Program-made: the position numbers and the translations under genes
Source: Ascidiella aspersa
Taxonomy: Eukaryota
Assembly: GCA_963924565.1 (NCBI GenBank)
Contig: OZ004610.1
Location: 4,650,001 to 4,714,000, forward strand
Direction: 5' to 3'
Length of the DNA: 64,000 nt
Notes under the pieces: generated by a model
Seen by the model: the letters and a program-made list of their open reading frames with translations, nothing else
Told to the model about the DNA's origin: nothing
The model's database searches: none
Shown here: positions 21,001 to 62,334 of the stretch, piece after piece
Layout: each line of letters starts with the position of its first letter
Position numbering within the stretch: position 1 is the stretch's first letter

Positions 21001-24000
21001 GTAGAAAGGTAACTGCGTCCCATTCAAGTCCAAATCTGCCCGCCCAGAACTACAATAGGACCGTCGGTGTTATGATACGCCCGCGCGTGTGTGCGTGCGT
21101 GTGCTGAAATAATGCGAGGAATTACTTGGCCAAGGGCAGCGGCGCGAAACTGTCCGGATTAAGGCGTGTGGGAACCTGTCGGGCGCCGCATTTCGGTGGG
21201 AACCGGCGCCCAAAGCCAGTGGGTCGTGCCGGCCATTGAACGGCTCAAAAAGTCGCGATCTTGTTTGCGTTTTTCGACCTTTCTGGCACTTGTGAATCGA
21301 AAACGACGCGCTACTGTTGTAAGCTGGATTTAAAACCGGATGCAAAAGCGTCGTTGTTTCGGTTCGAAGCCACTCGCCAGCTCTCAAGTGGCCTACTATG
21401 AATATTTCCAGCGTTCGCTGCTATTTTTAAGCACAAGTGCCAGTCGTTATATCGACCCAGCTTTGGCTGCCCAGATTTTAAAGCTGTTGCACCACAGAGC
21501 TTTGCTGTTTCGTATAAAGAACAATGATATCGTCTGGCAGCTTGCCGTTCCATACAGACGGAAGTGTGGGTTTGGCCGGGTTCTTGTACTCCTGGCTTCA
21601 CCTTGCCTCTGTGCAGACTAAAAGTTGTTGAACATCGGACGAACAGTTTTTTTTTTTAACGCACACAGAAAAGCCGATTTTCAAAACCTGTGTTCTGTGG
21701 CGCTGTTTTATGTTCGATTGTCCACCTTTCCTCTAATTAACTGGGCAAAGCCGGTTGCTGGGTTTAGTGAAATGACTAGGAGCGCATTTAAAAACATAGG
21801 CAGTTTTTAAAGTGGGTCTAAAAAATTGACGCGAAAAGCTTTTGGCGCTGTGAAATTGCGCAAAACGAATTTTATTGTTTGAGCATAATGGCTGGAGTTT
21901 GTAGTTAAATAATAAAGCCCATACAGAATAACGTTTTCAAAATTCAACCTACTTTTTTATGGGCTTCGCGCTTCGATAATCTTTTTACGTCTAATTTTAA
22001 ATTTACTCGATAACTATGGGTTTAGTTATCTCTCGAATATTTCATCTTTTATCCATGGTCACTTACAAACCAAACGCTTCCGTTCTACCAAAATCACTCG
22101 AAGCCAGTCAAAAAAAATTCCACCTCGTGCGTTTCAACGCGAGCGTGCCAATTTCGAATCGTGAGAGCGTCTGTCTGGCCCGCAGAGCCACGCGCTCCGA
22201 ACGGAAAAAGGCAGAAAACTAGAAGCCGGACATCCTGCTTCTGGCAAGCGCAGTCACGGGTCGGCGCCGAAAAAACGGCGTCCGCTTTACGTGTTGGATT
22301 TCGCACTTAGCGTGGCCCAAATTGACTGTAATGGCTCGCGCGTCAATCAGTTCAAAGCCAAGGCCGCCCGGCGAAATAGGGGCCGTTCAAATTGAGGCCA
22401 GAGCCTTAACGACGTTCCCTCATTTACGTTTCAACATCCGCGCTTGATATTTTCCGTGATTTCGTCTGACGCACTTGCGGCTCGGGGCCTAAGATGTCGC
22501 CCGCTCGCGAATGACGTCACGCGCTCCCTTTGTGACGTAGACAAAGGCCGGCCGCGCGAGCCCGTACGTTGTAAAATCGGCTAATTTTCGCCGCCCCTCT
22601 TCGTTTCAACGTGATTTTGCCGAGTTTCCCACGAGAATTCGACGCAAATTACAGCAGCAATCATGATTTCGTGCGCTCCCGTTCTAATATGGCTGTTTCA
22701 AACAAAGGACGCCCGATCATTTTTATATTGATATTGGAATTTCAGCCATGTGATAATTTTAACACGTTTTTTTGCGATTTTTTGTGTCTGTTTTATGTAA
22801 TTAATTTGGCCGCCCTTTTAAATTGGTTTTCGCATCAATTCTACCATAGCAATGACGTACGTCCAACCGTCGATTTTTGCAATTTCATTAATCGCAAGCA
22901 TTTTTTGCACACGGCACGTTGCTCGCATGTCACGTGACTTTTTGTGCTGCTGACGTTCCGACGAAAAGAGTCCGATCGATTGTCGACGCGCACGCACGCA
23001 ATAATGGACATCCCGGCGTGGCGTTTTTGCGCGTTTTCCACCGACGTTTTCAGCGCGGCACGTAACGCCGGCTATTTATACTTCGCGTCGCGCGCGCGCT
23101 ATCGTTCTGTGACGTAACAGTGCACCGAAAGCGGCTGAGTGCCGCGTCTGGCCGCAAAGACGCCCGCGAACTCGGCGAAAAAGGTCGCGCGACTTTTTGG
23201 GTTTGGTTTTATGCAAAAATATTTCCAGGAATATATTAAATATTTTAAAAATTCATTGTAAAACAGTATAGGTTTCTACGAAAATATTTTCCGAAAAAAA
23301 TTCGCTTATAAAACTTATTTACCAAAATACTGGGTTGAAACCAAAATTTTCTAAATAAAACTAAAATTTTGCCCTGTTTTCTCTGTGAAAGTTCGATGTC
23401 TGGTTGAAATTAAAGAAATAAAGGTACTTTAATGACCGTCGCAGAATGCAACTTTTACGATTTTGCCAATTTTTAAATAATTTACCCAAAGATCTTTTTG
23501 CAAATTTAAGCACAGCTTTCCATTGTTTGGAGAAGTTTGTGTTTAAATCGTTCACTTAGGTTTCACACACGACGGAAGTTCTCTCGCCAACAACCAAAAC
23601 ACACAAACACCCTTAAAGACACAGGCGCCGTTTCAACACAAATCAAGTGCCGAGCGGAAAAAAAACACCGTTCCGTCGCTATTTCTGTCCTTTGCCGGAA
23701 AACGAAAACGCATTCGTCTTGGGCGCGAGTTTGGCTTGCAAACGTGCTACTTTAACCTGCCGTAATGGCGCCCCAATGTTTGCTCTGGCGTCCCCGTCTC
23801 GGTCCAAGTTCGCGCGACCTCGTCTTGTGACTATGGCTCGAACCTATAGAGTCGGAAATTTGCGTAAATTCGCGTGGGATTTTTGCCACGCTTCTCTAGT
23901 TCGGCGAAAAAAGCGCTCGGGTGAAAATTACTGGAAATACCGCCTCCAGGCTGTTGCTATTAAGCACTGGACAGTCAACTCTAAGAAAAAGCGAGTAAAA

Positions 24001-27000
24001 TCGACGAAAAATCCTTTTTAAAGCGGCACTTCAAATACATGTGGAAATACCATTACAGAGAAGCACAACGTCGTGCACTAGAGTAGAAAGCTATAAAAGC
24101 GCTTAAGAAAAAAAATAATGTATAAAGTAATGTACAGGCCTCTAATAAAAAATCCATTCTCAAAGCGTGGACGTGTAGAATAAATACAATGCAGCCGTCC
24201 TTTATATAAAAAAAAACAGCTCGTTAAAACTGTCGTCGCCGCGCTATAAAGGCATCTGCGTCGTCTGCACAAAACAAAACAAGGTGCCGTCTGTTGTACG
24301 CCAACCAGGCCATAAGCACGCAGCAGGTTGCTGGCCTAAATTGCCGCACGCCAGGTATAAGCCACGCCATTAATAATGCACCAGTCGCTCTTCGGCTGTT
24401 TCTCTTTGCATAGCTCTGCCGTTTTGCTCAAATGCAAAGAGGGCCGCTGTGCAGCAGAAAGGGCACGAGAAAGCACCCGGCTTCCGTCTGAAAAGTACGC
24501 GGGTATTTTTAGAGTAGCGGCGATAGCTTGCTTCGGACTTTTCACACCGACGCCGCTTAAATTCGCGCTCCTTGGCTAGTCGGGCCTGCTCCTTTGAAAC
24601 GCGGATGTCGGGACGTTTTGCTTTACTGAGAGGACTTGCCTTGATCGTTGAAAGCACCTGCTTTTGGGAGTGAAACCGCACGCTTTTTTTCGAGTTTGTC
24701 ATCGCAGAACAGCTGTCAAGAAACCTTGCGATGAACACAGCTTTAAATGGGGGGTTGCGGGTTTCAATATTAGCACGTGTGAATGGGTGTTAGGCCAATC
24801 TGTTTACATTCAATATAAACAGCTCCTGAATTGGACACAAAACGGGATGAACAGCAGTGTTTTTGAGTGGTAATTGGCACTTTGCCATCGAAAAGAAGTT
24901 CAACGTGTTTTTATAGCAATGCAAGTTTGGCAATAACTAGGAGCCTTAATTGGTTCATGGGCTTTGATATTAGAAGTGTAAAATGAATATCAAGAAGGTT
25001 GTTCAGCTCCAAATTTTGACCAAAACTTCTGAAATCTTCAGTTTTTTAGCGTTCAAGCAACATAAAAAACAACTTTTCAAAATCGCCAGCACGTCTCCTG
25101 CATTCAGCAGCTGTTTTTTTTTGACTCGTCATCTCAGCAAATACCAAGGGCGCCCGTACACAATCAACATCAAATAGCAGTGAGCACTTTTCGCCGCCCG
25201 CGGCTGTCTGTGACGTAATAGACGGCATCGCGATGACCTTGAATGCACCGCGCGCGACCGACCCGCCTGACACTTCCCTGCATGAACTCCGCTAACGGAA
25301 CAAACGAGTCTGTCTGTTTACACTTGATCGTTTCGCAAGAGCACCTTTGTTTCAGCTTTTACTTTTTTCTATTATTTTAAGCCCCCCAAAATATGATTTT
25401 TGTTAATTTAGAAACTGCACAACATTTAAAGACTCCGCCAGCCTATTTAATTTGCCTTGGTGGTGATATTATATTTTTTTGTTTTTTTTAACTTTCAGTT
25501 TCTGCTGTATTTTTATTATGCGCGCCAAAAAGTCAAGTGAAAAACATCTTTTAAAATCGCGCCCTACTCAGTGGGCTCCATAAGCCCAATGAAAGCCGCC
25601 TTGATGTTGATCGCATTTAGATGTTACGCAATGCAAGTGACCTATGAGCGTTGGCGTCTCCTGGATCGGTCTGGCGGCGCAAGGCATGTTCTGCGGTCAA
25701 ACACGGTTCTACCTTAGCTAGGCGTCCCGCCACATTTCTGTCATTCCGCGCACGCAACGTTAGTAGCCGATTCGGGCAAATTCTTGGCGAGCCGCTGGCC
25801 TAATATGGCCGTGGGCGTCTTGCGCTCAATGCTGCCACTGTTTTAACCGGTTTATCATGTTTTTTGGGGGCTTTTGTAACTGTTGGTCAGATTCGAACCC
25901 GCGAGCTCCGGATTTAGAAACCGGTTTTTAAATGCCGCATTCGTCTATTTTGCTATTTCGGCTGCGGTGGGATTTCAACCCGTGCCCTTTGGATTTGGTG
26001 ACCGTATATCAAAAAAACGTGTTTGGCCAAAAAGTTTTTCGCTCGATTTTAATGAAATCGTCTGCGGTCGGATTTAAACCCGCGTCCTTGGGATTTAAAA
26101 CCGGTTTCAAAAACTTGATTTTGCGCGCCTAGTTGACCTTTCTCTCTCTCGCGAAAGAGCGGTTTTTCGCCTTTTGCTGTTGCTGCATCGCGCTTCCATT
26201 GTTCTGCTTCGAAAACCCGCGCGACCTCCATTCGTGGAAATCCGCCTTTGTTACGTCGAGATGTCTCGCGCCTCGAAAGCTAGACTCGCTTCCCCTGAAC
26301 CTACGCGAAAAACGCCGGAAGCCAGCTGTTTAGAAAGCAACCGGGGTCCCGGGTATTTACATTGCTAGCAGGTTTCGTTGAAAACCGTTAAGTTAAAAGC
26401 GCCTTTCTAGCCCTCCCACCGCAGTTTTTCCCGGATTTCTCTTTCCCAATACCCCACAAAATCGGCCAGACTTGCCCCGTCCCGCGAACTGCTACGACCC
26501 GCGCCCGGTGCGTACCGCGAACTTGTACGACCTCCCATCGCGATTAAAAATCCGTTTTAAATCTCCCGTGAAGCGAATGCGGGTTTGCGAAGCGGCGAGA
26601 CAGGTTTCGCAATCACACGTATGCCAGCAAGGCTAGAAATTCGATTTGCATACAGGACTTTGACGCGTTTTCCAAAAATTCCGAGCCTTGTAGCACAGGG
26701 TTCGGTGTGGCATTTTGTCCAGCACAACAGCAATGTTAATATTTACCATACATATTTTACCAGGACTCAAAATAATAAGTTGCTAGTTCATCACTTTAAT
26801 TTCGAGCACTGTATAGCAAAAAATCCTTGAACTTTTTTGTCTTATTTAAAGCCAGTCTAAATATTTCGCCACACAAATCGGCAGAGCGTCGGTCGTTATT
26901 TGAATCGGAAGCAGCAGTATTAATACTTTCCTCACACAGACACAGTTTCAGACTTGTGTGCGCGGAAACGTGATGCTTACGGTGCTCAACAAACCCCGGC

Positions 27001-30000
27001 TGCTGTATCCTGGTGGTAGCATCGCGATACAGGCACGTCTAGCCGCTATAGCGCACTTGTAGTGGCACGGATGCGGCTTTGTCCTCCGCAAATCCGCCGA
27101 GTATGTACACACGACAAGGCCAGGGACCCCGGGAACGCCAGGAACCACTCGGGCGCCACATCCGCTCTCCCCCCGGATCGATAACCGGATTCCGCGGCCC
27201 TCCAGACCTAAGTGGCCCCTCAAAAATTGCGTCGTGCGCCCATAAATGCACGCGCAGGTTGATCCGAAATATATATGTCCAATTAATTGCGGCGCCTTAC
27301 ATATGCTTTGTTGCGTCATCAAAGGCGCTTTATTAACAGCGCGCGCGCTCAAGGGTGCTCCAAGCTGATCCAACCCTGCTTTGAATCAAAGCCGTAGCTA
27401 GTGGCAACGTATCAAGCGTCCCCCACTCGAGCAGAATTTAGTTTTGATTGCAGATGCCCAAGTGGTGCTTCTAATCTCGCTTCGCTTTGTTTCTGCTGCT
27501 TCTCTGCGGTTCTGCGTCGCTTAGGTTGGAATAATATGCTCGAAATAGAATAATGTCGTTCTCCGCCGGTTGCTGTTGCGTTTTGTGAACTTGTTAAACG
27601 CTGTTAAGAGTTAAAATTTTTATTTCGAGGATCGGTTCACAAAGATTCATTTGAAACGTTTAATGCTACCTACTTCTGTATGAGCTTGGATATTCATTCC
27701 ACGTCTAACTACAACCTCCAGCAATTATCTTAAGATTTATACGAAAGGTTCACAAAACGCTACCTATAGTTATGTATGATGGCATTGGCTTTGATTTTCA
27801 TTACACATCTAACTATACGACTATTTAGGCCGAAATTTCGACGGATTTCGTGAAATTAAACGTAAATCCTTTTGTTGCAGGCACGAGAGTCTACTCGCCC
27901 CCCGAATGGGTTCGCAAGCACAGATACCATGGTCGTTCCGCTGCCGTCTGGTCCCTTGGCATCCTGCTGTACGACATGGTGTGCGGGGACATTCCTTTCG
28001 AGAAAGACGAAGAAATCGAAAACGCCGAGGTCCGCTTCACGCGGCAAGTCTCGCCAGGTAAATAGAGTTTTTTTTCTAATTTTTGCTGTGATAAACGCGA
28101 AATTGAGACAGAAAAGCGAAACTTTTTTTCGCTGTTTTAAGGGAAAAAAATCGATGCTCAAATCAGGACGTATTCAAAACCTGACAAATTCGAAAAAAAT
28201 CGCTTAAATCAAAACAACAGATTAAACAGTTAGAAAATCGCTTTTAGTTTCCAATATAACTATACAGTTTACTTAAATCAATTTTTTAGTCGAATCGTTC
28301 TTAAAATTTTGGAGTTTTATTATTTTTACAATCTATGCTGTTTTTAGCCAGCTCTTAAATCGCCGTAATCCGCTTTAATAACCCTTAGCTCGCCGATTAC
28401 GATAAATCGCTATAAAAAACTGAAGCTGGGTTTTCGCTTATTCCCTTTCCCAGAGAGGTGAGCGATTCCAGAAATCGCTCGTAAATTTAGAAGCATGGGA
28501 AAAGGCAGCAGGTCGTGCGCCGGCCATTATTATTAGACACAAACCGATGCTGTTGTGCACTTGGAACGACCTATACCCGACCTATTATTCGCACCCGTAT
28601 TAGATGAGCAAATATTTGCCCGACGTTATACGTATAGCCTTTGCCTTTGCATTTACGTTGATAGCTATATTAAGGATGGCCATATTAGGGACGGTCGATA
28701 GTTTGTTTTTCATTTTGATACCCAATATTTTCGACCAAAAAAGGCCGTTAGCATTTTAAATGTTTAAATATCTCTTTAATGATTTTTGACACTGTTGAAA
28801 CAAATTTGCCAAATGCTTTGAACCCTGCTTTTTTCAGGCAAAGCAAAAAAAATCAGCATTCAAATGTACGCAAAAGGCACAAAAAAAAATCATTTCGAAC
28901 CGCGTTAAAACCAATATTTTGTGACCTGCCTTTGGTTACGAACTCGTGTTGTCTCAGCAGTAAAGCATCAGCGACATAACAGCATTTCCTTTTGTGTGCA
29001 ATAGCCTTTGTTTAGCAAACGGCCGAAGCGACAGGCTGTAAATCGCGTTGCTATTCTCGTATATGGCACTGGATTCAAAAATAGTTCCCTGTTTGACAAT
29101 CGCCTGACCTTATTTACGCGCATTCGGGCGAAAATTTCGCGACCACATCTCGACAAAGCATAATGGCGCCGAAAGGCAAAATGCAAATGGATCACTTCCG
29201 CCGTTTCGTAGCATCAATGCAAAACCGCGATCTGAATACAGCCTTAAGGCGCTTTAAATGCGAATCGCTCGAATTTCAACTTTCGGTCTTAGCTCATTGT
29301 GCCTATTTTGCCTAAACCCTGGGTCAGGACGATTCCAGTTGTGGCCACGGCCCGGTTTTATCGGGCCAAAGGTCATCCCGCCATTAAAACGACTCTCGTA
29401 CTCACGTAGCCGAACATTACCCGATCTCTCTTTGTTAAACAAACTTAAACCTTTAACCTTTCCGGCGGCTCAAACCATGACGTAGGTAAAAATTCTTGCC
29501 TGTCATGCGGATATTGTATTATTCTTGCCCTGGGCGGGTTCCTGGACCCCCCTGGGTAGGATTAATCGTCCCTTCTGACGAATCGGGCGTACACTAGTGC
29601 GCCTAAACAAATAGCAGCTTCTTTGATCCACCCAAGCGCTGTGTGTTGTGGGCGCTTTCTCAAAACCGACGATTTTCAAACAACCGAGATTTCCTGTTGA
29701 TTTTGTGGCTCTCGGCTCGCAAAAAAGAGAGTAAACATGCGTCTTGAGTCGCGTATAATTCCACCAAGGCCAGCAGTAAGCCTTAAGTCTACTACGCGGC
29801 CATAAAAAGATTTGCTTACGTGGCGGCGTATTGTTGCTCGTAAGGCGCTTTTATTGTTTAATTCGGTCGCTAACGTAAGCTGTAAGCTTCTGACCAGGCG
29901 TTTAACCTCACGCCGACGTGAGCACCACCTGGAAATTCACGCAAACGCCAAGAATAGCTCGTGCGTGTTGCGCAAATGCACCTCTGCGTGGCTAATTGAC

Positions 30001-40561: not shown

Positions 40562-40691
40562 ATGGGTTTTAAACGCGTAATCTTTTTTGCTCTAGTTGGG
40601 TCGTTCATGCTCCATTATTATGTCGGTGTTCCTGATATGACTTACGCCTTGAAGGTGAAGTTTGTTAAATATACAGCATTTCAGTATTCCG
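40562..40691 (+). CDS. SIGMAR1: Sigma-1-like exon 1 (MGFKRVIFFALVGSFMLHYYVGVP...QYS)
   Basis: ATG, hydrophobic TM segment, donor TCCG|GTAAGT. Confidence 0.8.
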
Positions 40692-43600
40692 GTAAGTTTT
40701 TCATTGAATTATTTCATCAAACCCGACTCCGCAGTCATGGTTGTAACACTGACTAAATGACTTAAATCCAATAAATCGGTGGCCCAAATCAAGTTACTAT
40801 GAAATAAATTGGGCGCTGGTTAAGAATCCTACTACAACGCACATTATTTGGGTTAGGGTGCGGGGTTAGCGTTTGGGTTAGGATTGGTCAAGCATTATTA
40901 TTAAATAATGAATATAACCATACTTGACCCACCCACACCCAAAGGCTAACTCGCACCCTAACCCAAATATTGTGCGTTAATTTAATAATTGTTGTAGGAT
41001 TGTAGACCAGCGCCGTAAATTGCCTTGTTTACATTTTTTTTGGCAAAATGCTTAGAGCCAAGTCATTAGGACAAATGCTGTGACTTTTTGTGTAGGCAAT
41101 GACTCAATTTCATTAGAATAAACTCATTTTTTCTTACTTTAAACTCGTAGAACAGTATTCCTGTTTTGCATTATTTGTATGATTTAGTAAAACTCATTTG
41201 AATTACCTTAACTCAATTATATAACTTGATGAGGTTGTTGAATAGCCTTAAAAAGTGCCTATTGGCCTTGACCTGATATTATTTCACAGATTAATGTTGA
41301 TAAATTTAATTAAACTACTTTAGAAAAATATATAAAAAGCAAAAACGAAGTTTGAGCTAAACCTAATGCAATAAACTAGGCCAGTCAGTGATTTAACTTG
41401 AGTGCACAGTTGCTCTTTCAATTAATTTAACAAAAAAAATGTAAGTCTTAATACAAAATGCCTAGACGTAACAAACAACAAGTTATATAATTATGTTGCA
41501 GGTTACAAGTATTCATCAAGGCATTTAAGGGAAAATTTTGGAAGAGAATATCCCAGGAGCATTTTGAGGAATGAAGAATGGATACAATCTAACACAGGTT
41601 GCTGTCAAAGATATATATATTTGTTTTTTTACTTTTTTTTTTGAGAAAAGTTTTTCTTAACCGTTGTACTATGAAATTGTTTCTGATGTCCTAAATCTTA
41701 AAAAAAAACTTTTGCGTGTTATTTTTAAATGCTGTTAGACAAGAAAAATTTTGTCCAAGTTTGACAGATTGAACACTTTGGTTATTGTGCTAGGGAAATG
41801 TTTATGTAGCCTAAAATTAGGTAACTGTCGTAAAGTTTCTGCTAAAATTTGCGCAGCTATAATATCGTTATTTCTGAAAATAAAGTACTATATACAGAAA
41901 ACCCTAAGAGCAACGGTAGTTTTGCATGTTTGAACAATTTTTTACTGCTGAACCCATTTTACAACGATTTTCTATGAAACCGCTACAACTGAAAGTGCAA
42001 CTACACAGGGAAAAACCCATAAATCGCAGCACAGGCCTAACTTTTCAACCTGGTATGTCTGTAGCCAAATCTGCATTTCATATAATTTAGGGCAAAATTT
42101 CTGCTGTGCAGTGTTACATTTGCATGTGTGCAACTAATGTTTTTTTGCGAACTTGAAATGTTCAATGCTAACATTGCATTAAAATTTAGGTGCAAAACAC
42201 ACATTTATTTGAAACAAAAACTTATTTCAAAAATCTCTTGACAGTGTGTACCTTTCGCAAAATAACTGGTCTGTTGTTAAATGCTAGTTACCCTACAAAA
42301 AGGTATTGCTTTTGCATCAATTTTCAATGTAAACTTTATATTTTATTGCTGTCTGTCTAACTAACTTGAAAAATGTATCTTCAGGTGGTCTGCAAGGGTC
42401 TGTTTCTATCCTGTACGCTTCCTTGCGTGAAATACTTGTGTTGTATCATGCTGAAGTCGAAACTTCTGGAAACACTGGTAAGAAAGTGTTTTCCAAAATC
42501 TATCTTTAGCAAACGCAAGCTGCTACCATACAGGTTAAAAATATTAGCTTTTCCAGCTTACCATGTGTTCAAGCCTTTTTATAGATAAATATGTTTTTTT
42601 AAAATATAAAGTGTATAAGAGTATATTTTTTCTTAATTACCATTTTTCAAAGGACGTCACCTCATGAACATCTCTGCAACAGTACTTAAAGGTGGAATGA
42701 CATATTCTTCGAGCAATTTAAGAAGTGCAAAATCTCTAGCTGAAGGTTGAGTTGGTTTTATTGTATTTTTAACGGCTGAACCTTAATATTTTTCAGTGTT
42801 TTATGTTATGACCAAACAATAAAAAGCTATTATTTTATGACCAAGGTGTAGGTAGCAAACTTGTCAAGGCATTACTTCTAATTTTTTGCAGTGAACTTTG
42901 TGACATTTAAAGTTATTTATCAAATAAATAATTTCTACTTGTTTGTAATGAGCAAAATTAGTTAGTAGTGTCTTGTTAATTTTACAAATGATTTTCTAAT
43001 GTTTTAATCTGGTATAATCATACTAGTTTATGTTCTCAGATCGTGTTTTTAGTTAGACTTTTTTTAATTGCATTACAATGGCAAATTATTGAAGAAGCAT
43101 TTTATTTTTCTATAACAAGCAAAAACAGTAAAGGATATCTAAATAAAACTCGTTTTTTACTAGTTGCCAAGCGTTATTACCACACTCGGATTTTGCTAAT
43201 AGCCAGTTTCTAACCTTCTATTTTTTCATAATTTTTACTTTTGAGATGAAAATTGCTGTATTAGATTGTAAATCGTGGTTGAAATCTGATGGTATTATAT
43301 AGGCACTGATCTCATCATAGTATTGGTAGATATAGATAATATTACTTGCCATTGGGTATTGAATCTGATCCGATATTAACAAATATTGACATAACACCGC
43401 CATTAACTTTTGTTTTTTTGATTTTCAGGTGAAAATACAGTTTTTCGCATGGGAGATTCTTCTGTGGTTAAACTGTCAAGCAAGACGACTATTTTGATCT
43501 ACGGGCGCGGTTACGTTCCACTAACAATGGGTTATTGGCTTTCCGACTCGTTATTCAGCCTTCATGACCCAATACTGGCTATCAACACAATATGGATGTA

Positions 43601-44725
43601 CATTAAAGGTAACCTAAATTTTAAAGTTTAACATTTGAATATTTTTTTATTAGTATAGTGCAGTGTCAGGTTTTTGTGTGAAAGTTATAACACAAATCTA
43701 AACCTCATATTGCCACACAGTATCAGGCTTCTGGCATAAAAAATCTAACCATTAAAAAGGCTTAAAAAAGGGAGTTTTTAGAAACAATTTTAAATCAGTA
43801 TTTAAATACCTTCATATAAAGAAAAGATTGCTTCTGACTGGCAAAAAATTGTGAAATATATACAGAGACTTAACACAGAAAAACTGATAAGTATTGCAAT
43901 TTTTAAAATTACATATCCCAGCGGAGATTACAAAAAAAATAATTTTTAATTCTCAAACTGTGGTTGTGCGTCATTTTAATTTTTCAAGGGCGACTCACAA
44001 TAATTCCGTTTCATATCGAAACTCAATTAGCAGTAATACACGCTTTCAGATATTATTGTCTCCTGACATTTGTATTAAACTCATGGTTACGAGAAAACTG
44101 CACAAGTTGGGATCATTTTGTGATACAACACTTTTCGCAGTGTGTGTCACAAGTCCAAAATTGTAGTTGAGTTACAATGCCCATTCTGATTATAAAAGCA
44201 TTATAGAACACTAGTATCGCAAATTTCTTAGTATCGCAAAAAAATTTATTTAAAGGAATTATCTCCTATTGTGTCCTATACTGAAATGGCTTGTAACGTT
44301 AAAAAATGTTTTTCAATTTCTATAATTCCTTGTTTTTAATTTAAAATTATGCCAAAGCTATCACCAGAAATAGTCTGAGAGCCACTGCCATAAATCAATA
44401 ATATTGAATTTAGGAAACAACCATTTAATTGGTGATTCACTGGTTAAGCTTTAAACATTTTAAACATGTATACATTTGTTCTGAAAATAGTCAAAAGTAA
44501 ATCTTTTTTATTTTTTTAGCTGCTTCAGTCGGCGATGCAACCTTTTGGGAATGGTTGGACAATGTCAGGAATTATTTACTAAACGTGTCACAAAACGGGG
44601 TGCAGTACTTCTATGAGAGCGGCTACCACGCCGTTACGCACATGCCAGAGACATTAAACAGCCTATTAAGTTGGTTGTTAAACCTACTGGTGGATATTAA
44701 AGATAAGCTTGTCTCGCTGGTGTGA
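40562..44725 (+). CDS. SIGMAR1: Sigma-1 receptor / ERG2 family protein, divergent; join(40562..40691,41502..41597,42385..42477,42653..42745,43429..43608,44520..44725), 265 aa
   Basis: N-terminal TM helix, QYSG (human QYAG), EWIQSNTGG (QWVFVNAGG), LYASLRE (LHASLSE), SGNTGR (RGHSGR), YGRG..P.T......D.LFS..D ([23 protein letters not shown]). Three intron positions and a 93-nt exon coincide with human SIGMAR1 as I recall it. Confidence 0.88.
40812..41014. mobile_element. Foldback MITE (family A) in sigma-1-like intron 1
   Basis: Same termini and arms as the 51752 copy; TSD ATAAATTG/GTAAATTG (7/8). Confidence 0.88.
41502..41597 (+). CDS. SIGMAR1: Sigma-1-like exon 2 (GYKYSSRHLRENFGREYPRSILRNEEWIQSNT)
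   Basis: Acceptor atgttgcag, donor ACAG|GTTGCT; only the phase-1 frame is open. Confidence 0.82.
42385..42477 (+). CDS. SIGMAR1: Sigma-1-like exon 3 (GGLQGSVSILYASLREILVLYHAEVETSGNT)
   Basis: Acceptor tcttcag, donor ACTG|GTAAGA. Confidence 0.87.
42653..42745 (+). CDS. SIGMAR1: Sigma-1-like exon 4 (GRHLMNISATVLKGGMTYSSSNLRSAKSLAE)
   Basis: Acceptor tttttcaaag, donor GAAG|GTTGAG; 93 nt like human exon 3. Confidence 0.85.
43429..43608 (+). CDS. SIGMAR1: Sigma-1-like exon 5 (GENTVFRMGDSS...IYGRGYVP...WMYIK)
   Basis: Acceptor attttcag, donor AAAG|GTAACC; YGRG motif. Confidence 0.88.
44520..44725 (+). CDS. SIGMAR1: Sigma-1-like terminal exon 6 (AASVGDATFWEWLDNVRNYLL...KLVSLV*)
   Basis: Acceptor tttttttag; 68 open codons in the required phase within AT-rich DNA; TGA 44723-44725. 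Confidence 0.78.
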
Positions 44726-45889
44726 GGTTGTTACTGCTATGCACATTTTTTTATTTTTAGCAGAAATGTACTTGGAGGTATATTAAAGGTTAGGGTATGT
44801 CTGGTGATGTAGGGTTGGTAACTTAGAACGTGGTACGGTACCATCATTCCTTGTTTTGAAAATTTATACATTGTTTTAAACCACTGCCTGGTGATTAGGG
44901 CTACAGAGTCTGTTTAAAACAACCAGAGTTTCAAGTCCCATCTCCGGTAAATTTGCTGATTCCAATGAGTCAAGATTGCATTGTATGCTAAAAAATAAGA
45001 TTCTTTATTTTTGTTGGCCAATATTTTTATTCTACCGTGTTAAAATGCCTGTCACTTATTTTTTTACATTTTTCTTGTAAAAGCTTTTTATTATTATATG
45101 CACAAGAGATTTTGGAAACGACTTAATTCAATGTAAGTCTCAGTCAGGTCATTATGAGAGCAAGTCAACTTCAAGACAAGTTATTGACATAAAACGGTAA
45201 ACTAATAATTTGTCGCCGAAAACCTATTTAATTTTAGCACTTAAGTCAAATAACATTAGTCCAAGTCAAGTCATTTTTTCAAAAGAATACATTGCCTTGA
45301 GTCAACACAACACTGATACTGTACATCTAAATTTTTTTTTTTTTGCAAATATTCTAACTGTTTGTAATCTAGTTTTTGTATGCTGAAAAAGAGACCGTTT
45401 TTGCTTACATATCAACAAGTTGCAGTTTTCTTTCTTTCCGTAATTGCAAACTACTGTTTATAAAATTTTATTACTCGAATAAACATAACAAAACAAACAA
45501 AGTGGGTGATTGGAGCATGAAAAATTTTCAAAAAAGAGGAAAGAAAACGTGTTTTGAAGTTGTGTGACAGAAAACTCTTAAGACCGATTTATCTTGTTAT
45601 CCACCAAACTTTAAAAACATCTCAAGTTTAAGGAGTTACTTATATTTAGAAGAAAATAGACTTTACAAGAAAAGCTTTATCAAAGGAATTTGCAATGTAA
45701 AAAACTCTACAATGGATTAACGTTAACACCAAACCCCTGTTTCAATCAAATTTTTGTTTATAATCGTATAAGACCCATGATGTTTCTTTAATTCGACCAA
45801 ACTTCCAGCAGCTAGTTATCACCATAGACCAGGGATTTACAATAATATAGGATCGAAGCTGATGCCATGTGGTGTTATTGATGTTTGCT

Positions 45890-46153: not shown

Positions 46154-46282
46154 CTACCATAGACCTCTTCCCCAGCAATGGTAAAGTAAAATAACGTGCC
46201 TTTTCACGGGGTTTACAATCAAGTAAGCAAAGTTCTGTTCGTGTTCTTCTAAACTTGGGTAAACCAATTTTCCATCTCCATC
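46154..46282 (-). CDS. CFAP300: CFAP300 terminal exon 7
   Basis: DGDGKLVYPSLEEHEQNFAYLIVNPVKRHVILLYHCWGRGLW*. Confidence 0.88.
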   Translation of the reverse strand, partial: DGDGKLVYPSLEEHEQNFAYLIVNPVKRHVILLYHCWGRGLW

Positions 46283-49200
46283 CTACAGAGGGAACAAAAA
46301 AACAAACAGTTAATAACTATGTTCGCCATGGAATAAATATAGATGTACAATATTAATTTTTTAATACTTAATGTGTCATACAGTAGAGTAATATAAATAA
46401 AAACAGTCATTTGAGGCACAATCATGTGCATGTAAGACACACATAGTCTTATAAATACATGGTTTTCGTTGCCTAAAAAATCCACAAACGAAAAACAGAA
46501 TCTGAAATAGACTGGGTTTAAACGCTTTGTCAACTTTGCCATGTGCTTATTCACTCTACGTAAAATTAGTGATGGAGTTATAAATATCTGTCAGCACATA
46601 GTTGGCAGAACAGATATTTTACAAAATATCAACTTTCATTGCCAACCTTAACAACAAAACTTAAATAGACTTTTCAAAGAAAAGTAATATTTGACATATT
46701 TTTCATTTTTTGTGCATGAAAAGTAGTAATAGATAAATAAGTGAAATCATAAAAAAGTTAAATAGTTCCAAAATGATTCAGGTTTCAAGGACAAAATTAT
46801 TAAAAATTTATTCCATGATTTTGGACAATTATAATGAATGAAGGTCGTAGGTATGATGTCAAATGAATACCGTAGACTTTGCAGAAGTTTTTGTAAACGT
46901 TTTAATAAATGGTAATTCATTTTTAACATCCTAAATAAGTATTTAAAATGTTTGCAAAATAATCTGGTGTTGAGAAGAAATAAAGACATGAAACAAGAAT
47001 AAGAAAAACAATCTACTATAGGCATTTGAAAACTAAAAACGTTTACAAAATAATCTGGTGTTGAGAAGGAATAAGATAGCTAGGAAACAGAAATCGTTTA
47101 AGAGAAACCAATCTACTAGAAAACATATAAAAATTGATTTTAATTACCTTTCCAGTTATCTTGTACACCTTTGATACTACGACAAGTTCATTTGTTTCAG
47201 GCTTTTTTTGAACGCTAAAAAGTATTATTGTTTAGATTAGCAAAAAAAAAAAAAAAAAAAAAAGTTATGAAGATGTTCATTACGCTTTGTTATAATACAC
47301 ATTGCGACTTTTTTGATGATCGCTTTGGTAAATTTAAATACACATGCTGTTATAACAAGATAGAAATGTCTGTTCATGACTTGTCATTTAAAAAGAACAG
47401 GTTTTTCAACAAGTGGTTTTAAAACAAAAGTAAAAATGTATGTTAAACAGTGCTATTAGGTTTTGAGGTTTAGAACATGACAAAAATGGCTACAAGCGTT
47501 TCAATTAATGTTTTTAAGTATCAGTACCTGACTAAGTCTTTGTAGAGTGATTTGGTGACATCGAAGTATGGCTGGATGTTGTCCTCGTATTGGCAGATCG
47601 GCCCGCCAACAACTAGATGAGAAAAGAGTCGGAAAAGTAGCTCAGAGCGTTCCTCGTCACTGTAACACTCAAAGTTATCTGAATCCTCCATCAATAGCAT
47701 CTGTAAAATTTTCAAAAGGTAAATCAAAACGTGCCTACTAAAGCTATCTAAATCTTCAATTAGAAGCAATTTTAAAATTAGTTAAATAGGGGTTTACAAA
47801 AAATAGTTAAATTAAAATCTGTTTATAAGAATTTAAAAGTTATTAGATTAATATATTTATACACTTGGACAAAAAATAATTAAATCGATATGTGTCACCT
47901 TAAGTGTTTCAAATCTTCAGTAAGAAGATATGATATAACTTCTACTTTACCTTCAAGGTAAAGCAAAACTTACCTTTCTTAGTTCGTCTGAAATGGTGAT
48001 GCCTTCAAACATTTCATCAAAGCATTTGCAAATGTTTCCATTTTCTCTCACAATTCCTTCTGCTTTTAGTTTGTCGAAAAATCCCATTGAAACAGTTGTA
48101 CAGTTCACTTCCTCGATGTCAAAGTTTTTGGGTGGATCTTTGTTTATTGAAAAAATACAAAAATAAAATCAGTTCTGCTTACCAGTGGTTTTCAACTTTT
48201 TTTACATTTAAATAATTTTTCGGAACACCAAATGAAAGTTCTAAATATTGCATTAAATAAAACAACGCAAATCTATTTGGTTTTGTTTTTTAAGTCAATG
48301 TGTCATCTCATGTTCCTAATAGAGCACCTTACAACCATGTTTACCCAGTAGCTTGATGTCATTTCATTACAATACATTGTCAATATTTCAGAAAGTTATG
48401 GACGTCTGTTACACTACATTTAAAGGTGTAAAATAAACTCTTACTTTTTCAAGTAAAAGGGCCAAAAAGAATAATTTTAGAGCTGAGCAACCACATTTTC
48501 AGAAATTGTATCCTTTTTTATTGTATTCACCTTAAAATACACACTAACACCTCGTAACAGTATTGCAAAAATTAATTTAAAATGTCTATGTTATTTGCAA
48601 AACACATTTCAAGTCAAGGCCATAAGCAACAATTAGCAAGTTAAGTCATTGATTATTGTAATGTCTTTGACTGGCCCATTAATCACTAACCTATTAAAAA
48701 TATATTTAAATAGCTACATAAAAGGAACACAACAAAAAACAATATTTTTTTTACTCACCCATCATTCCCCAAGAACCACTAAATCCCATAACTTGGATAC
48801 TTTTAAGCACATTGGAGTCGGTAAAGAAGTCCTAAATAATTGAAATCAACTAAAATGACAAATAAAATAACTTTATAAATGTTGTACAAAATTACCTTGA
48901 CAAACGTTTCCTTTAAATGATATGGAAAGGCCCTGTCAAAGCTAAAGGTCCACGCTTTTAAACGATCCAGTAAGTACCTGAAACACAAGGTTGTTCATGT
49001 TGTTGGAAATTAGTACAAGTTATGGAATGATTGGGTTTAGGAAAAAAATTTCAGTTGTTATTATCTTTTATTGGGGCTATTTTATCATATGTTTCAAAGG
49101 GGTAATATCTAACATATATCTATATTTTTAAACAAGACATAAATTGCCTGACTTTAATCTCTTGGGAGAAGTGGCATAGCTTATTTTAACTTAACTTAGG

Positions 49201-49537
49201 TGAAAGTGAGTTAGGCAGATGAAGTAGTACATTAATATTTAAAAAGATTAATAAAAAAACACAGCTGGCATTTATATTTCCTCTCCAGTGTGACACCAGA
49301 AGAAGGCTACTTGAACAGATTGCTGGTGTCACTTTGAACGTTTCAAGTAACTCTTTATTGTTTTCAACATCTGATACCTACTTTATGGGCTTTGGTTTTC
49401 TTACTACGTCTTAATACAACCTCCCACTATTATGCTCTAATCACATACCATTTTTCTAAAAATGTCTTAAATTCCTTGTTGCACAGAGATGGGAGTTGTT
49501 TGGGTAAAAATGTGAACCTGAAAGGTGAGTCGTCCAT
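46154..49537 (-). CDS. CFAP300: Cilia- and flagella-associated protein 300 (C11orf70, dynein-arm assembly factor); complement(join(46154..46282,47148..47214,47528..47700,47974..48137,48759..48831,48896..48977,49449..49537)), 258 aa
   Basis: Spliced product has FRFTFLPK, F.FD..F, CTTVSMGFF, ISDELRKMLLMEDSD, LFRLFSHLVVGGPICQYED, LYKDLVSV and YPS...HEQNFAYLIVNP.KR......YH, collinear with the C11orf70 family; GT-AG introns with consistent phases. Confidence 0.93.
47148..47214 (-). CDS. CFAP300: CFAP300 exon 6
   Basis: SVQKKPETNELVVVSKVYKITGK; ttttag / GTAATT. Confidence 0.87.
47528..47700 (-). CDS. CFAP300: CFAP300 exon 5
   Basis: MLLMEDSDNFECYSDEERSELLFRLFSHLVVGGPICQYED...LYKDLV. Confidence 0.93.
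47974..48137 (-). CDS. CFAP300: CFAP300 exon 4
   Basis: DPPKNFDIEEVNCTTVSMGFFDKL...ISDELRK; donor GTAAGT. Confidence 0.9.
48759..48831 (-). CDS. CFAP300: CFAP300 exon 3
   Basis: DFFTDSNVLKSIQVMGFSGSWGMM; atttag / GTGAGT; 64-nt preceding intron. Confidence 0.85.
48896..48977 (-). CDS. CFAP300: CFAP300 exon 2
   Basis: YLLDRLKAWTFSFDRAFPYHLKETFVK; tttcag / GTAATT. Confidence 0.88.
49449..49537 (-). CDS. CFAP300: CFAP300 exon 1
   Basis: MDDSPFRFTFLPKQLPSLCNKEFKTFLEKW, donor TG|GTATGT. Confidence 0.85.
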
Positions 49538-49899
49538 CTTGAAGAGCTATTTTTTTGTACATTAACAGTTAAAAAACGACAGAGTTGTTATTGGTCACAT
49601 TACACTCCTATAAAAATTAAACCACATCATTAGGTTAAATCAAGCTAATTTACTTAGCAGTTGTGGTTATGATACTTGCAAACTTGCTAGTGACTTTACA
49701 GCCTCTAAAAAGCCAAGTTTAAAATGTACTGCTGACCCAATGTGTGATTAAAACATGAAAATTAGAATTTTAGATAATATAGAAGGGTAATACAATTTGT
49801 TTTTTTTATACAATAATTACCACTCAAATTGGATTCATTTAGAATTTTCGGAACAAATCCTGAAAACTTTCGAAAATGAATGAAAAATCGACGTCCTTT

Positions 49900-60699: not shown

Positions 60700-61297
60700 T
60701 CAATCAGTATCATCTAAATTTTCAGAAACATATTTTTTTTGCTCTTGGCGAGAATTCCAATGCAGACATTCACTGAGAGAGTCGAACCAGTCGTCAAAAG
60801 GATTTACTTTACATACGCATGGGGTCGGATGAATTGACGTCCTTATCGTTACATAATCACCCTTATCAATCACAACACCAGCTCTCCCATCAAAACAAAC
60901 CGAAACCGGGCCTCTTGCGTTTTTCGATACCGTAAAGGCAAGAGTTACCCCCGCAGGAACAATAATGGGACGAAAAGACAACGAATGTGGACAAACGGGG
61001 GTTATCATAATGGAGGGGACATTAGGGTGAACCATAGAGGCCCCTGCAGCAACAGCATAAGCCGTACTTCCGGTTGGAGTGGATATAATGAGGCCGTCGC
61101 CTTGGACAGAGGTAATCCGACGGTTTTCTAGGTAAAGGTCGATGTTGCAGAGGTAATGATTGCTTCCACGATCCACCACCACTTCGTTAAGCACTAGGTA
61201 GGAGCATTCACTCTCCCGGTTGATGTCGGCGTTAGCGTTCAAGTCCAATCCTGATTCTCCATTCTCCTGAATTCCATTTAGGGCAGGAACCTTTGCT
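60700..61297 (-). CDS. NADK: NAD kinase coding exon 2
   Basis: Acceptor tttaactag; NE and TPTGSTAY motifs; stop at 60700-60702. Confidence 0.95.
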
Positions 61298-62334
61298 CTA
61301 GTTAAACAAAAACTTGTTGTAAAAAAACAGTCCTTTTAGGATTAGTAAGGCCACCCTGTTTTGATACAATTATTTTCTAAATTATAGTAGCCTTATTATA
61401 GTTTTTTGTTACAAACTATACCACATAAGTAAAATTAAAATGTCCAAATGCAACATGTACAATTAGTAAAACTGCACATATCACAGTAGTGTATAATATA
61501 TCTACAATTTATTTTTTATTTGTGAGAAAACTGTCATTCTTTCAACAAAAAACTTTGAAATAATTTCAAAAAAATGGAATAAAAACGCATTGACTATCCA
61601 ATACACGAATATAAAATGATCACTTGGTTATGTAAAAAGTAATAAAAACTTGCAGTGTCTACAAATAATAATGTTCATTGTTTTTGAAAATACCAAGCTT
61701 AAATTTACCTTTCCACATTGCAACGAAGGCGACTTCTTAACATCAGAATTGCATTTCCCTCTAAAACCTGAGATATCGTTTTTCGATAAGTTGCAAATGA
61801 ATGGGAAGTTAAAAACCCAAGTGATCCGGAGTGAAAGGCTATAATGGGGGGCATGCTCTCTTGAAATAAAGATGCAGCATACAACAAAGTACCATCTCCT
61901 CCAAGACATATAACCAAGTCGATATCATCTGTTTTAAACGATGACTTAAGTTGTTCATGGATTTTTCTAAACCCAGCATCCATGAATGCGGTATTTTCGT
62001 GAAGTTTTTTCTCGACAAACACCTTGAGTTGCTTCTGAATAACCAACCAAGTAACGAGTTGCTTAAAAGATGTATTCACGTCGCTATCATTTCTTTTGAT
62101 GACAAGAACATTTTCAGGTGGTCTTGACCATTTTAAACGCTGGTCATAAGGGTCGATTTCATATTGTCTGTAAAGTTCTTCTTTTTGGGTGGACGCCTTT
62201 GGACCAAACATACAGTCAGGCTGGGGGCCAATTAACGACTTGGCCCGTATGAAAGGATTTTTTTGTTTTTTTTGCATTTTGCTGCTTGATTTTACTGGCG
62301 TTTTGATCTTTACCAACTTTTTTTCGTTTTCCAT
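60700..62334 (-). CDS. NADK: NAD kinase (cytosolic type); complement(join(60700..61297,61709..62334)), 407 aa
   Basis: Signature motifs LGGDGTLL, GSLGFL, LNEVVVDRG, VQGDGLIISTPTGSTAY, TPVCPHSLSFRP, FDGR, LHWN; single GT-AG intron 61298-61708 in phase 2. Confidence 0.96.
61709..62334 (-). CDS. NADK: NAD kinase coding exon 1
   Basis: GGDGT motif; donor AAAG|GTAAAT. Confidence 0.95.

What the first reader, a model, noticed from the sequence alone, without database searches (positions are those of the whole stretch)
40562..44725. Sigma-1 receptor homologue whose cation-binding pocket has been rewritten (E172I, D126A, Y103I)
Seen: the six-exon ORF aligns without gaps to human SIGMAR1 (from memory) across the cupin-like barrel. 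W169-M-V-E172-Y-G-R-G reads T-I-L-I-Y-G-R-G (codon 43497-43499). A-E123-I-S-D126 reads M-N-I-S-A (42676-42678). S-E102-Y103 reads R-E-I (42432-42434). H154 is F and W164 is L, while structural residues (W89, N-x-GG, E102, G-R119, YGRG, D188, D195) are kept. Established: E172, supported by D126 and Y103, anchors the basic amine of sigma ligands, and the acidic residue is conserved in fungal ERG2 sterol isomerase. Inference: an intact, spliced paralogue with a fully apolar pocket, perhaps a neutral sterol/lipid sensor or a ligand-blind subunit of mixed trimers. This is the best candidate for an undescribed system in the window.
Basis: partly seen in the sequence, partly recalled or inferred. Interest (0 to 1): 0.85.

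Follow-up and report, generated by a model that had tools for sequence, protein, structure and literature searches.

The report
Amine-blind sigma-1 receptor of sea squirts
This is a sea squirt's only sigma-1 receptor gene, intact and expressed, but like those of other sea squirts it lacks the acidic residues that hold amine drugs in the vertebrate receptor, so it probably works without such ligands or with neutral lipids.

Summary
A six-exon gene on the + strand (40562-44725, all introns phase 1, GT..AG) encodes about 265 aa of the ERG2/Sigma1R family (Pfam PF04622 on exons 3 and 5). At human positions E172, D126 and Y103 it reads I, A and I. One slip: W89 is L; the tryptophan that is kept is W81.

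It is not a paralogue. Three searches of this 308.6 Mb genome found only this locus. It is the orthologue of the Ciona and Styela genes annotated "sigma non-opioid intracellular receptor 1-like": same six exons as Ciona, same CFAP300 neighbour.

All five tunicate proteins compared have V/I at 172, V/I/A at 126 and F/I at 103. Twenty vertebrates are invariant E, D, Y. The gene is transcribed and spliced, and evolves under constraint (pN 0.30 against saturated pS 0.80).

The Ciona orthologue is predicted to fold like solved sigma-1 receptors. Its predicted homotrimer passes the controls, though this may be model memory.

Best reading: an amine-blind sigma-1 receptor that keeps a remodelled hydrophobic pocket, probably for neutral lipids or sterols. 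This is inferred. The literature I could search did not mention this loss. It is a new variant of a known kind, of moderate interest.

The parts
40562..40691 (+). Exon 1: start codon and the N-terminal hydrophobic helix (membrane anchor)
   Evidence: Sequence. Same length and start as exon 1 of the Ciona orthologue. RNA depth, and the intron-1 joint 40691|41502 seen in 11 reads.
41502..41597 (+). Exon 2: helical linker up to the N-x-G-G motif. W81 is kept (41579-41581). Two residues fewer than vertebrates just before it.
   Evidence: RNA depth 6.5 in this bin.
42385..42477 (+). Exon 3: barrel strands beta2-beta3. W89 is L (42390-42392), E102 is kept (42429-42431), Y103 is I (42432-42434), F107 is Y.
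   Evidence: Pfam PF04622 2.6e-6; site table; RNA depth.
42653..42745 (+). Exon 4 (93 nt): R119 is kept, Y120 is H, E123 is N, D126 is A (42676-42678); then a variable loop.
   Evidence: RNA depth. The polymorphic non-synonymous sites 42697, 42700 and 42722 lie in the loop, not in the pocket.
43429..43608 (+). Exon 5: strands beta8-beta10 and helices alpha4/alpha5. H154 is F, W164 is L, E172 is I (43497-43499), Y-G-R-G is kept, A185 is W (43536-43538), and D188, D195, Y206 are kept.
   Evidence: Pfam PF04622 1.3e-9; 66% identical to Ciona and 34% to a vertebrate; site table; highest RNA depth.
44520..44725 (+). Exon 6: a C-terminal tail specific to tunicates, making the protein about 40 residues longer than the 221-223 aa vertebrate receptor. 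Predicted helical in the Ciona orthologue. Includes the stop codon.
   Evidence: Aligns without gaps to the Ciona tail (25% identity over 51 aa, E 4e-6). Helices 205-234 and 236-259 in the AF2 model of the Ciona protein. Absent from 20 vertebrates.
44726..45300 (+). 3' untranslated region (at least this far)
   Evidence: Continuous stranded RNA depth of 4.8-7.4 to the end of the stretch laid.

Best explanation
This is the single-copy tunicate orthologue of the sigma-1 receptor (ERG2/Sigma1R family). It is an ER-type membrane protein with one N-terminal helix, a cupin beta-barrel and C-terminal helices, and it is predicted to form the same homotrimer as the vertebrate receptor. In the tunicate lineage the Glu172/Asp126/Tyr103 set that anchors the basic nitrogen of sigma ligands was replaced by aliphatic residues. 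Most other pocket-lining residues were exchanged as a set, and about 40 helical residues were added at the C-terminus. Shown: gene structure, expression, single copy, orthology, the substitutions and their conservation across tunicates, and constraint on the protein. Inferred: it cannot bind classical cationic sigma-1 ligands with high affinity (about 0.85). I also infer that it keeps an open, more aliphatic cavity that takes neutral hydrophobic ligands such as sterols, steroids or other lipids, which would modulate a chaperone or scaffold function in the ER membrane (about 0.45-0.5).
For: - Family: Pfam PF04622 scores above the cut-off on exons 3 and 5.
- Single copy: three searches of the genome find only this locus.
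- Orthology: the best relatives are the Ciona, C. savignyi and Styela proteins named 'sigma non-opioid intracellular receptor 1(-like)'. Ciona has the same six-exon layout and the same downstream CFAP300 gene on the opposite strand.
- Lineage-wide change: all five tunicate proteins have V/I at 172, V/I/A at 126 and F/I at 103, while 20 vertebrates are invariant E, D, Y. Four further exon-5 fragments also read V/I at 172. Thirty vertebrate-invariant positions differ in every tunicate and 18 are kept, among them G87, G88, G91, E102, R119, R175, D188 and D195.
- Ancestral state: Glu and Tyr are also present in fungal and Naegleria ERG2 (PMC8230181), so the tunicate state is derived.
- Constraint: window against Ciona over exons 3-5 gives pN 0.30 against pS 0.80, which is saturated.
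- Expression: stranded RNA depth on all six exons, and the intron-1 joint in 11 reads.
- Fold: the AF2 model of the Ciona orthologue has pLDDT 82 and matches 7w2c at 6e-21 and 5hk1_A at TM 0.83.
- Trimer: predicted-complex score 0.75, best of 3 controls 0.00. That mark was reached by 21 of 30 proteins solved as pairs of one chain and by 0 of 23 solved as single chains. The runs agree in at least 63% of contacts and the partner's pLDDT is at least 71.
- Cavity kept: 18 of 23 literature pocket positions are changed, none to D/E, and the net side-chain volume is about 209 cubic angstroms smaller in the window protein (44-242 smaller across the tunicates).
- Neutral ligand is feasible: Xenopus E169A binds progesterone as well as wild type (Kd 0.98 against 0.94 uM), while binding of DHEA sulfate is about 25-fold weaker (PMC11224282).
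Against: - No binding or structural data exist for any tunicate protein.
The trimer pass may be model memory of solved sigma-1 trimers.
- Ten of the eleven residues that contact progesterone in Xenopus are substituted here, so steroid binding cannot simply be carried over.
- Conservation of the new pocket residues could reflect core packing rather than ligand contact.
- I could not see non-chordate animal homologues, so 'tunicate-specific' rests on vertebrates plus fungal and Naegleria ERG2 as reported in a paper.
Confidence: 0.5

Rival explanations
1. A ligand-independent scaffold or chaperone. The barrel is kept only as a structural core, the former pocket is vestigial or closed (for example plugged by W185), and function runs through the membrane anchor, the trimer interface and the new C-terminal helices.
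For: The structural and interface residues are the ones that stay invariant: G87, G88, G91, E102, R119, R175, D188, D195. A185W puts a bulky residue on helix alpha4, which lines the pocket in vertebrates. A conserved-length tail of about 40 residues was gained. The trimer is still predicted.
Against: Net side-chain volume at the pocket positions falls rather than rises in all five tunicates. The replaced pocket residues are themselves strongly conserved among tunicates: Y107, H120 and Y184 are invariant, 172 is always V/I, and 89 is always L/I.
Confidence: 0.3
2. One reading: a divergent paralogue that sits beside a canonical receptor and forms mixed trimers as a ligand-blind subunit.
For: The trimer interface residues are kept and a homotrimer is predicted.
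Against: No second family member was found in the 308.6 Mb genome with the Pfam model, with exon 5, or with a vertebrate-type query. No canonical-type tunicate protein appeared in any homologue search. The Ciona gene shares this gene's exon layout and neighbour.
Confidence: 0.03
3. A sterol C8-C7 isomerase-like enzyme of ERG2 type that acts on neutral sterols.
For: Family membership. T117 and H120 resemble the Thr-119 and His-122 reported in fungal Erg2 (PMC8230181). No EBP-family match was seen in this genome at E 0.01, although that search is inconclusive for a short, intron-split domain.
Against: The Glu that is the key polar residue of ERG2 (Glu-174 in the fungal model, aligned to E172) is I here and V in the other four tunicates, and its Asp partner is also gone. 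The vertebrate receptor, which has both acids, has no detectable isomerase activity (10.1101/333765).
Confidence: 0.03
4. A decaying or non-functional copy (pseudogene in the making).
For: Loss of residues that are essential for ligand binding in vertebrates. Several non-synonymous polymorphisms in exon 4 and one in exon 6.
Against: All six exons are open with canonical splice sites. The gene is transcribed and spliced. pN 0.30 is far below the saturated pS of 0.80. The same derived residues are held in Ciona, C. savignyi, Styela and a fourth tunicate-like transcript. It is the only copy in the genome.
Confidence: 0.02

Closest known systems
Vertebrate sigma-1 receptor (SIGMAR1; solved structures 5HK1 human, 7W2B-7W2H and 8W4B/8WUE Xenopus)
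   Same: Same Pfam family. The alignment is ungapped from W81 to about K208. N-terminal membrane helix, cupin barrel and two C-terminal helices. Kept residues include the G87-G88-x-x-G91 motif, E102, R119, Y-G-R-G, D188, D195 and Y206. The Ciona orthologue is predicted to have the same fold and the same trimer.
   Different: E172, D126 and Y103 are I, A and I here. 18 of 23 pocket positions are changed, including W89L, W164L and A185W. Y120H, F107Y and F184Y are fixed in all tunicates. The protein has six coding exons and is about 40 residues longer at the C-terminus.
Annotated tunicate 'sigma non-opioid intracellular receptor 1-like' proteins (Ciona intestinalis, C. savignyi H2ZFX4, Styela clava XP_039251260.2; the Phallusia orthologue used in PMC12398221)
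   Same: Orthologues. Exon 5 is 66% identical to Ciona. Same exon layout and same CFAP300 neighbour as Ciona. Same derived pocket residues and the same C-terminal tail.
   Different: A different species. A (not V/I) at position 126 and I (not V) at 172. N85 is kept here. These proteins are named by automatic annotation only, and I found no paper that remarks on the missing Glu/Asp.
Fungal/protist ERG2 sterol C-8 isomerase
   Same: Same family (PF04622). T117 and H120 resemble the Thr-119 and His-122 reported in Erg2.
   Different: ERG2 keeps the Glu and Tyr equivalent to E172 and Y103 (Glu-174/Tyr-105 in the fungal model; Glu-232/Tyr-163 in Naegleria; PMC8230181). The tunicate protein has neither.
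Engineered Xenopus sigma-1 receptor E169A
   Same: A receptor without the anchoring glutamate. It still binds the neutral steroid progesterone with unchanged affinity (PMC11224282). This is the closest experimental analogue of the natural tunicate state.
   Different: It is a single laboratory substitution in an otherwise vertebrate pocket. The tunicate protein has changed 18 of 23 pocket positions and has held that state across species.

Membership tests
ERG2_Sigma1R protein family (Pfam PF04622) | Match to the family profile above the curated cut-off | tested here: met
   Exon 3 scores 27.4 bits and exon 5 scores 38.2 bits against a cut-off of 21. The same two exons are found by the family search of the whole genome.
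ERG2_Sigma1R protein family (Pfam PF04622) | Fold: one N-terminal membrane helix, a cupin beta-barrel and C-terminal helices | tested here: met
   Tested on the Ciona orthologue, not on the window's own joined protein. AF2 pLDDT 82. Foldseek gives 7w2c 6e-21 and 5hk1_A TM 0.83, with generic cupins far behind at 1e-6.
ERG2_Sigma1R protein family (Pfam PF04622) | Homotrimer through the barrel edges | tested here: inconclusive
   Prediction only, on the Ciona orthologue. Score 0.75 against a best control of 0.00, with at least 63% contact agreement and pLDDT of at least 71. The pass may be model memory of solved trimers. R119, D195 and the G87-G88-x-x-G91 motif are kept.
Sigma-1 receptor in the pharmacological sense (high-affinity site for cationic amine ligands) | Glu172 that pairs with the ligand's basic nitrogen, supported by Asp126 and Tyr103 | tested here: not met
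   I, A and I at these positions in the window, and V/I, V/I/A and F/I in all five tunicates. No D/E at any of 23 pocket positions.
Sigma-1 receptor in the pharmacological sense (high-affinity site for cationic amine ligands) | Nanomolar binding of (+)-pentazocine, haloperidol and similar ligands | not testable with these tools
   Needs radioligand binding on recombinant protein.
ERG2 sterol C-8 isomerase | The conserved Glu (Erg2 Glu-174, aligned to E172) and Tyr (Tyr-105, aligned to Y103) of the active-site pocket | tested here: not met
   Both are replaced by aliphatic residues. The ERG2 residues are taken from PMC8230181, not from an alignment made here.
Tunicate SIGMAR1 orthologue group | Shared exon layout, shared neighbour gene and shared derived residues with the Ciona gene | tested here: met
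   Six exons with breaks at matching protein positions. CFAP300 lies downstream on the opposite strand in both. Thirty shared derived positions.

The most novel reading that the evidence does not exclude
Tunicates carry a naturally re-tuned sigma-1 receptor. Its barrel has been rebuilt as a set (aliphatic residue at 172 and 126, L at 89 and 164, W at 185, invariant H120, Y107 and Y184) to recognise a neutral membrane lipid or sterol instead of amines. This would make it a second ligand class of the family, and a natural separation of the receptor's chaperone or scaffold role from amine pharmacology.
Probability: 0.35. Interest if true: 0.7.

Novelty: new variant of a known kind. Interest (0 to 1): 0.5.

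Why it matters
What the sigma-1 receptor's natural ligand is, and whether its cellular role needs a ligand at all, are old open questions. Nearly all of its pharmacology rests on the salt bridge to Glu172.

Here the only family member in a whole chordate subphylum appears to have done without that glutamate and its Asp partner, while staying expressed and under constraint. That suggests the conserved core function of the protein does not depend on binding amines. It also offers a natural comparison protein for binding and structural work.

Ciona is an experimentally tractable system in which a ligand-blind receptor could be studied in vivo. The practical consequence is that sigma-1 drugs are not expected to act through this protein in ascidians.

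Tried and rejected
- Second copy. I searched the genome with the Pfam model, with exon 5 and with a vertebrate-type protein. Only this locus appeared, so the paralogue and mixed-trimer readings are rejected.
- Non-chordate animal homologues. The last allowed profile search returned 682 hits, but the 120 that were listed are two Ciona proteins and vertebrates. The state of Glu172 in amphioxus, echinoderms, molluscs, cnidarians and nematodes could therefore not be read. The ESM Atlas call only confirmed the family.
- More tunicate gene sequences. The exon-5 fragments P0001, P0003, P0004 and P0005 show V/I at 172. The Styela protein was not on record there.
- dN/dS. Synonymous sites between the window and Ciona are saturated (pS 0.80), so I can only state that pN is far below pS.
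- Splice joints. Read laying printed the RNA joint of intron 1 only. Four more joints were counted but not shown, so introns 2-5 rest on the RNA depth pattern, on GT..AG ends and on the matching Ciona layout.
- Joined protein. I never joined the six exons into one protein for a search or a fold. Exons were searched one by one by reference, and the Ciona orthologue P0002 served as proxy for the fold and trimer predictions.
- EBP/TMEM97 family (PF05241). Nothing was found in this genome at E 0.01. The domain is short and intron-split, so this is inconclusive and I draw no conclusion from it.
- Literature. Searches for tunicate or ascidian together with sigma-1 and E172 found no paper noting the loss. 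The library does not cover most subscription journals.
- Human sequence. No human sequence was used.
Full report
**Gene model**

The sequence between 40562 and 44725 on the + strand holds six open exons: 40562-40691, 41502-41597, 42385-42477, 42653-42745, 43429-43608 and 44520-44725. All five introns are phase 1 and have GT..AG ends. The split codons read G, G, G, G and A, and the frame ends in TGA. The product is about 265 aa.

Exon by exon, Pfam's ERG2_Sigma1R model (PF04622) matches exon 3 (2.6e-6, 27.4 bits, profile positions 80-109) and exon 5 (1.3e-9, 38.2 bits, positions 144-199). The cut-off is 21 bits.

Exons were handled by reference. The Ciona orthologue served as proxy wherever a full-length chain was needed.

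I used human numbering as Xenopus number + 3. This offset comes from the statement in PMC10094450 and PMC11224282 that human E172 equals Xenopus E169. An alignment of 20 vertebrate and 5 tunicate proteins (A4) gives this site table.

| Human position | Residue in the window | Codon |
|---|---|---|
| E172 | I | 43497-43499 |
| D126 | A | 42676-42678 |
| Y103 | I | 42432-42434 |
| H154 | F | 43443-43445 |
| W164 | L | 43473-43475 |
| E123 | N | 42667-42669 |

E102, R119, Y173-G-R-G176, P179, D188, D195 and Y206 are kept.

- W89 is L (42390-42392). The tryptophan that is kept is W81 (41579-41581).
- The window lacks two residues just before W81. From W81 to about K208 the alignment is ungapped.
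- The pocket is free of acidic residues but not fully apolar. H120, Y107, Y184, T181, T202 and Y206 line it.

**Expression**

An RNA-seq run of the same species (X3, about 6% of it read) puts stranded reads on the bins that hold each of the six exons and on at least 575 nt of 3' UTR. Almost nothing falls in the introns, apart from a repeat in intron 1.

The intron-1 joint 40691|41502 is seen in 11 reads. Four further joints were counted but not printed. None of the RNA or DNA reads laid showed a differing letter at the three key codons, so neither an allele nor RNA editing restores an acid there.

**Not a paralogue**

The genome is 308.6 Mb in 75 contigs, and the window is C4:4650001-4714000. 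I searched it in six frames with the Pfam model, with exon 5 and with a vertebrate-type protein. Each search returned this locus alone. A canonical copy would have scored far higher than this divergent one with the last two queries. The 'ligand-blind subunit of mixed trimers' reading therefore has no partner.

**What it is related to**

An exhaustive HMMER search with exon 5 found 11 proteins. The closest are:
- a 260-aa Ciona intestinalis protein named 'sigma non-opioid intracellular receptor 1-like' (66% identity on exon 5);
- Styela clava isoforms with the same name (46%);
- four short exon-5 fragments (54-69%).

The remaining hits are vertebrate receptors at 34-39%. Two further searches added C. 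savignyi H2ZFX4, a Styela entry named 'protein erg2 homolog', and a 262-aa transcript-derived protein.

The Ciona gene (locus L005) has six exons broken at the same protein positions. It is followed by CFAP300 on the opposite strand. In the window, CFAP300 exons lie at 46157-49546 on the - strand. The window gene is therefore the orthologue of the annotated tunicate SIGMAR1-like gene.

Other notes of this scan also treat this genome as an ascidian. My own hits and the shared gene order agree with that.

**A lineage-wide, conserved change**

In alignment A4 all 20 vertebrates (fishes, coelacanth, amphibians, reptiles, birds and a marsupial) have E172, D126 and Y103. All five tunicate proteins have V/I, V/I/A and F/I. 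The four exon-5 fragments also read V/I before Y-G-R-G.

Between human positions 78 and 210, 18 vertebrate-invariant residues are identical in every tunicate: G87, G88, G91, L96, S99, E102, G115, G118, R119, G131, G157, G174, R175, G176, P179, D188, D195 and Y206. Thirty differ in every tunicate.

Many of the changed positions are fixed within tunicates:

| Change | State in the five tunicates |
|---|---|
| H97Y, F107Y, Y120H, F184Y | all five |
| W89 to L/I | all five |
| W164 to L/M | all five |
| M93 to V/I | all five |
| A185W | four of five |

A paper reports that fungal Erg2 (Glu-174, Tyr-105) and Naegleria ERG2 (Glu-232, Tyr-163) carry the equivalents of E172 and Y103 (PMC8230181). The tunicate state is therefore derived. 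I could not test this with my own alignment, because no non-chordate homologue was within reach.

**Selection**

Between the window and Ciona, over exons 3-5, pN is 0.30 while pS is 0.80, which is saturated. A decaying copy would show pN close to pS. Together with the open frames in several species, the conserved splice layout and the RNA evidence, this excludes a pseudogene for practical purposes. A proper dN/dS needs closer species pairs.

**Fold and assembly (Ciona orthologue as proxy)**

AlphaFold2 on alignment A4 gives mean pLDDT 82 and pTM 0.70. The model has an N-terminal helix, ten barrel strands and four C-terminal helices, the last two (205-234 and 236-259) formed by the tunicate-specific tail.

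Foldseek places the model on sigma-1 receptor structures: 7w2c at 6e-21, and 5hk1_A with TM 0.83 and rmsd 3.2. Generic cupins follow only at 1e-6.

A three-copy complex prediction scored 0.75, with 0.00 as the best of 3 controls. That mark was reached by 21 of 30 proteins solved as pairs of one chain and by 0 of 23 solved as single chains. The runs agree in at least 63% of their contacts and the partner's pLDDT is at least 71. The tool warns that a pass may be memory of solved sigma-1 trimers and that it was calibrated on two copies. I take this as showing likeness of the interface, not binding.

The window's exon-6 tail aligns without gaps to the Ciona tail (25% identity over 51 aa, E 4e-6). 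The tail is homologous but evolves fast.

**The pocket**

I took 23 pocket positions from PMC10094450 and PMC11224282. Of these, 18 are changed in the window and none is D or E in any tunicate.

The summed side-chain volume is about 209 cubic angstroms smaller in the window protein, and 44-242 smaller across the five tunicates. This is a crude estimate: it assumes an unchanged backbone and uses residue volumes from memory. The large-to-small changes (W89L, W164L, Y103I, F133M, Y120H) outweigh A185W. The lumen is therefore more likely kept than filled.

Experimental precedent exists for a neutral ligand. In Xenopus, progesterone sits in the membrane-proximal hydrophobic zone without any direct hydrogen bond, and E169A leaves its Kd unchanged (0.98 against 0.94 uM). 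DHEA sulfate, which contacts the glutamate, binds about 25-fold more weakly (PMC11224282). However, ten of the eleven progesterone-contacting residues are substituted here, so steroid binding cannot simply be carried over.

**Verdict**

- Shown: a real, expressed, single-copy tunicate orthologue of the sigma-1 receptor, whose amine-anchoring residues were replaced together with most of the pocket lining. This state is conserved from Ciona to Styela.
- Inferred: it does not bind classical cationic sigma ligands (about 0.85). It keeps a cavity for neutral lipids or sterols (about 0.45-0.5), or else works as a ligand-free trimeric scaffold or chaperone (about 0.3).
- Unlikely: ERG2-type catalysis, the paralogue reading and decay (0.03 or less each).

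The gene family and the tunicate orthologues are already known and annotated. A Phallusia orthologue even served as outgroup in a published tree, which did not comment on these residues (PMC12398221). My literature searches found no mention of the loss. I file it as a new variant of a known kind, of moderate interest.

**Limits**

- The capped homologue searches listed no non-chordate animals.
- Only one RNA joint was printed.
- The window's own full-length protein was never folded.

Noticed in passing
window 40812-41014 (intron 1): A palindromic element about 200 bp long. Its nested inverted arms are 40836-40862/40952-40978 (96% complementary) and 40812-40837/40989-41014 (85%). DNA-contig word depth here is 10^4-10^5 against about 50-100 nearby, and RNA reads fall on both strands. 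It looks like a very abundant MITE-like repeat.
   Followed up: partly
window 46157-49546, - strand: Exons of a CFAP300 (cilia- and flagella-associated protein 300) gene, convergent with the sigma-1-like gene. Pfam PF14926 scores 1.5e-27 and 2e-18 on two exons. The same gene order is found in Ciona.
   Followed up: partly
window 60700-62334, - strand: Two long open exons of an NAD kinase gene: PF20143 at 1.4e-34 and PF01513 at 4.2e-18.
   Followed up: no
window 44976 and 44166-44180: Structural polymorphism. Nine RNA reads and the DNA contigs of other individuals break at 44976 in the 3' UTR and continue with unrelated letters. Two different 19-nt insertions occur at 44166 and 44180 in intron 5 in the two DNA runs.
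   Followed up: no
window 41970-42136 (intron 2): Low stranded RNA depth (1.1) inside intron 2. This could be unspliced precursor or a minor alternative exon. Styela has an annotated longer isoform with an extra insert, though at a different place.
   Followed up: no
window 42697, 42700, 42722, 44644: Non-synonymous differences between individuals (M to L, T to A and R to K in the exon-4 loop; M to I in the tail), beside synonymous ones at 42390 and 44527. None touches a pocket position (codon reading is mine).
   Followed up: partly
window 8001-28000: A block of 43-48% G+C in a window that is otherwise 30-39%. The one long ORF there (8517-9170) has no Pfam match.
   Followed up: no
whole genome G000: No match to the EBP/TMEM97 family (PF05241) at E 0.01 in the six-frame search. 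The domain is short and intron-split, so absence is not shown. It may be worth a proper look, because EBP is the animal sterol C8-C7 isomerase.
   Followed up: no
L005 14462-17014 (Ciona locus): In Ciona an oxysterol-binding-protein gene (PH + Oxysterol_BP, 850 aa) was called about 2.3 kb beyond the sigma-1-like/CFAP300 pair. No counterpart was found in the window.
   Followed up: no
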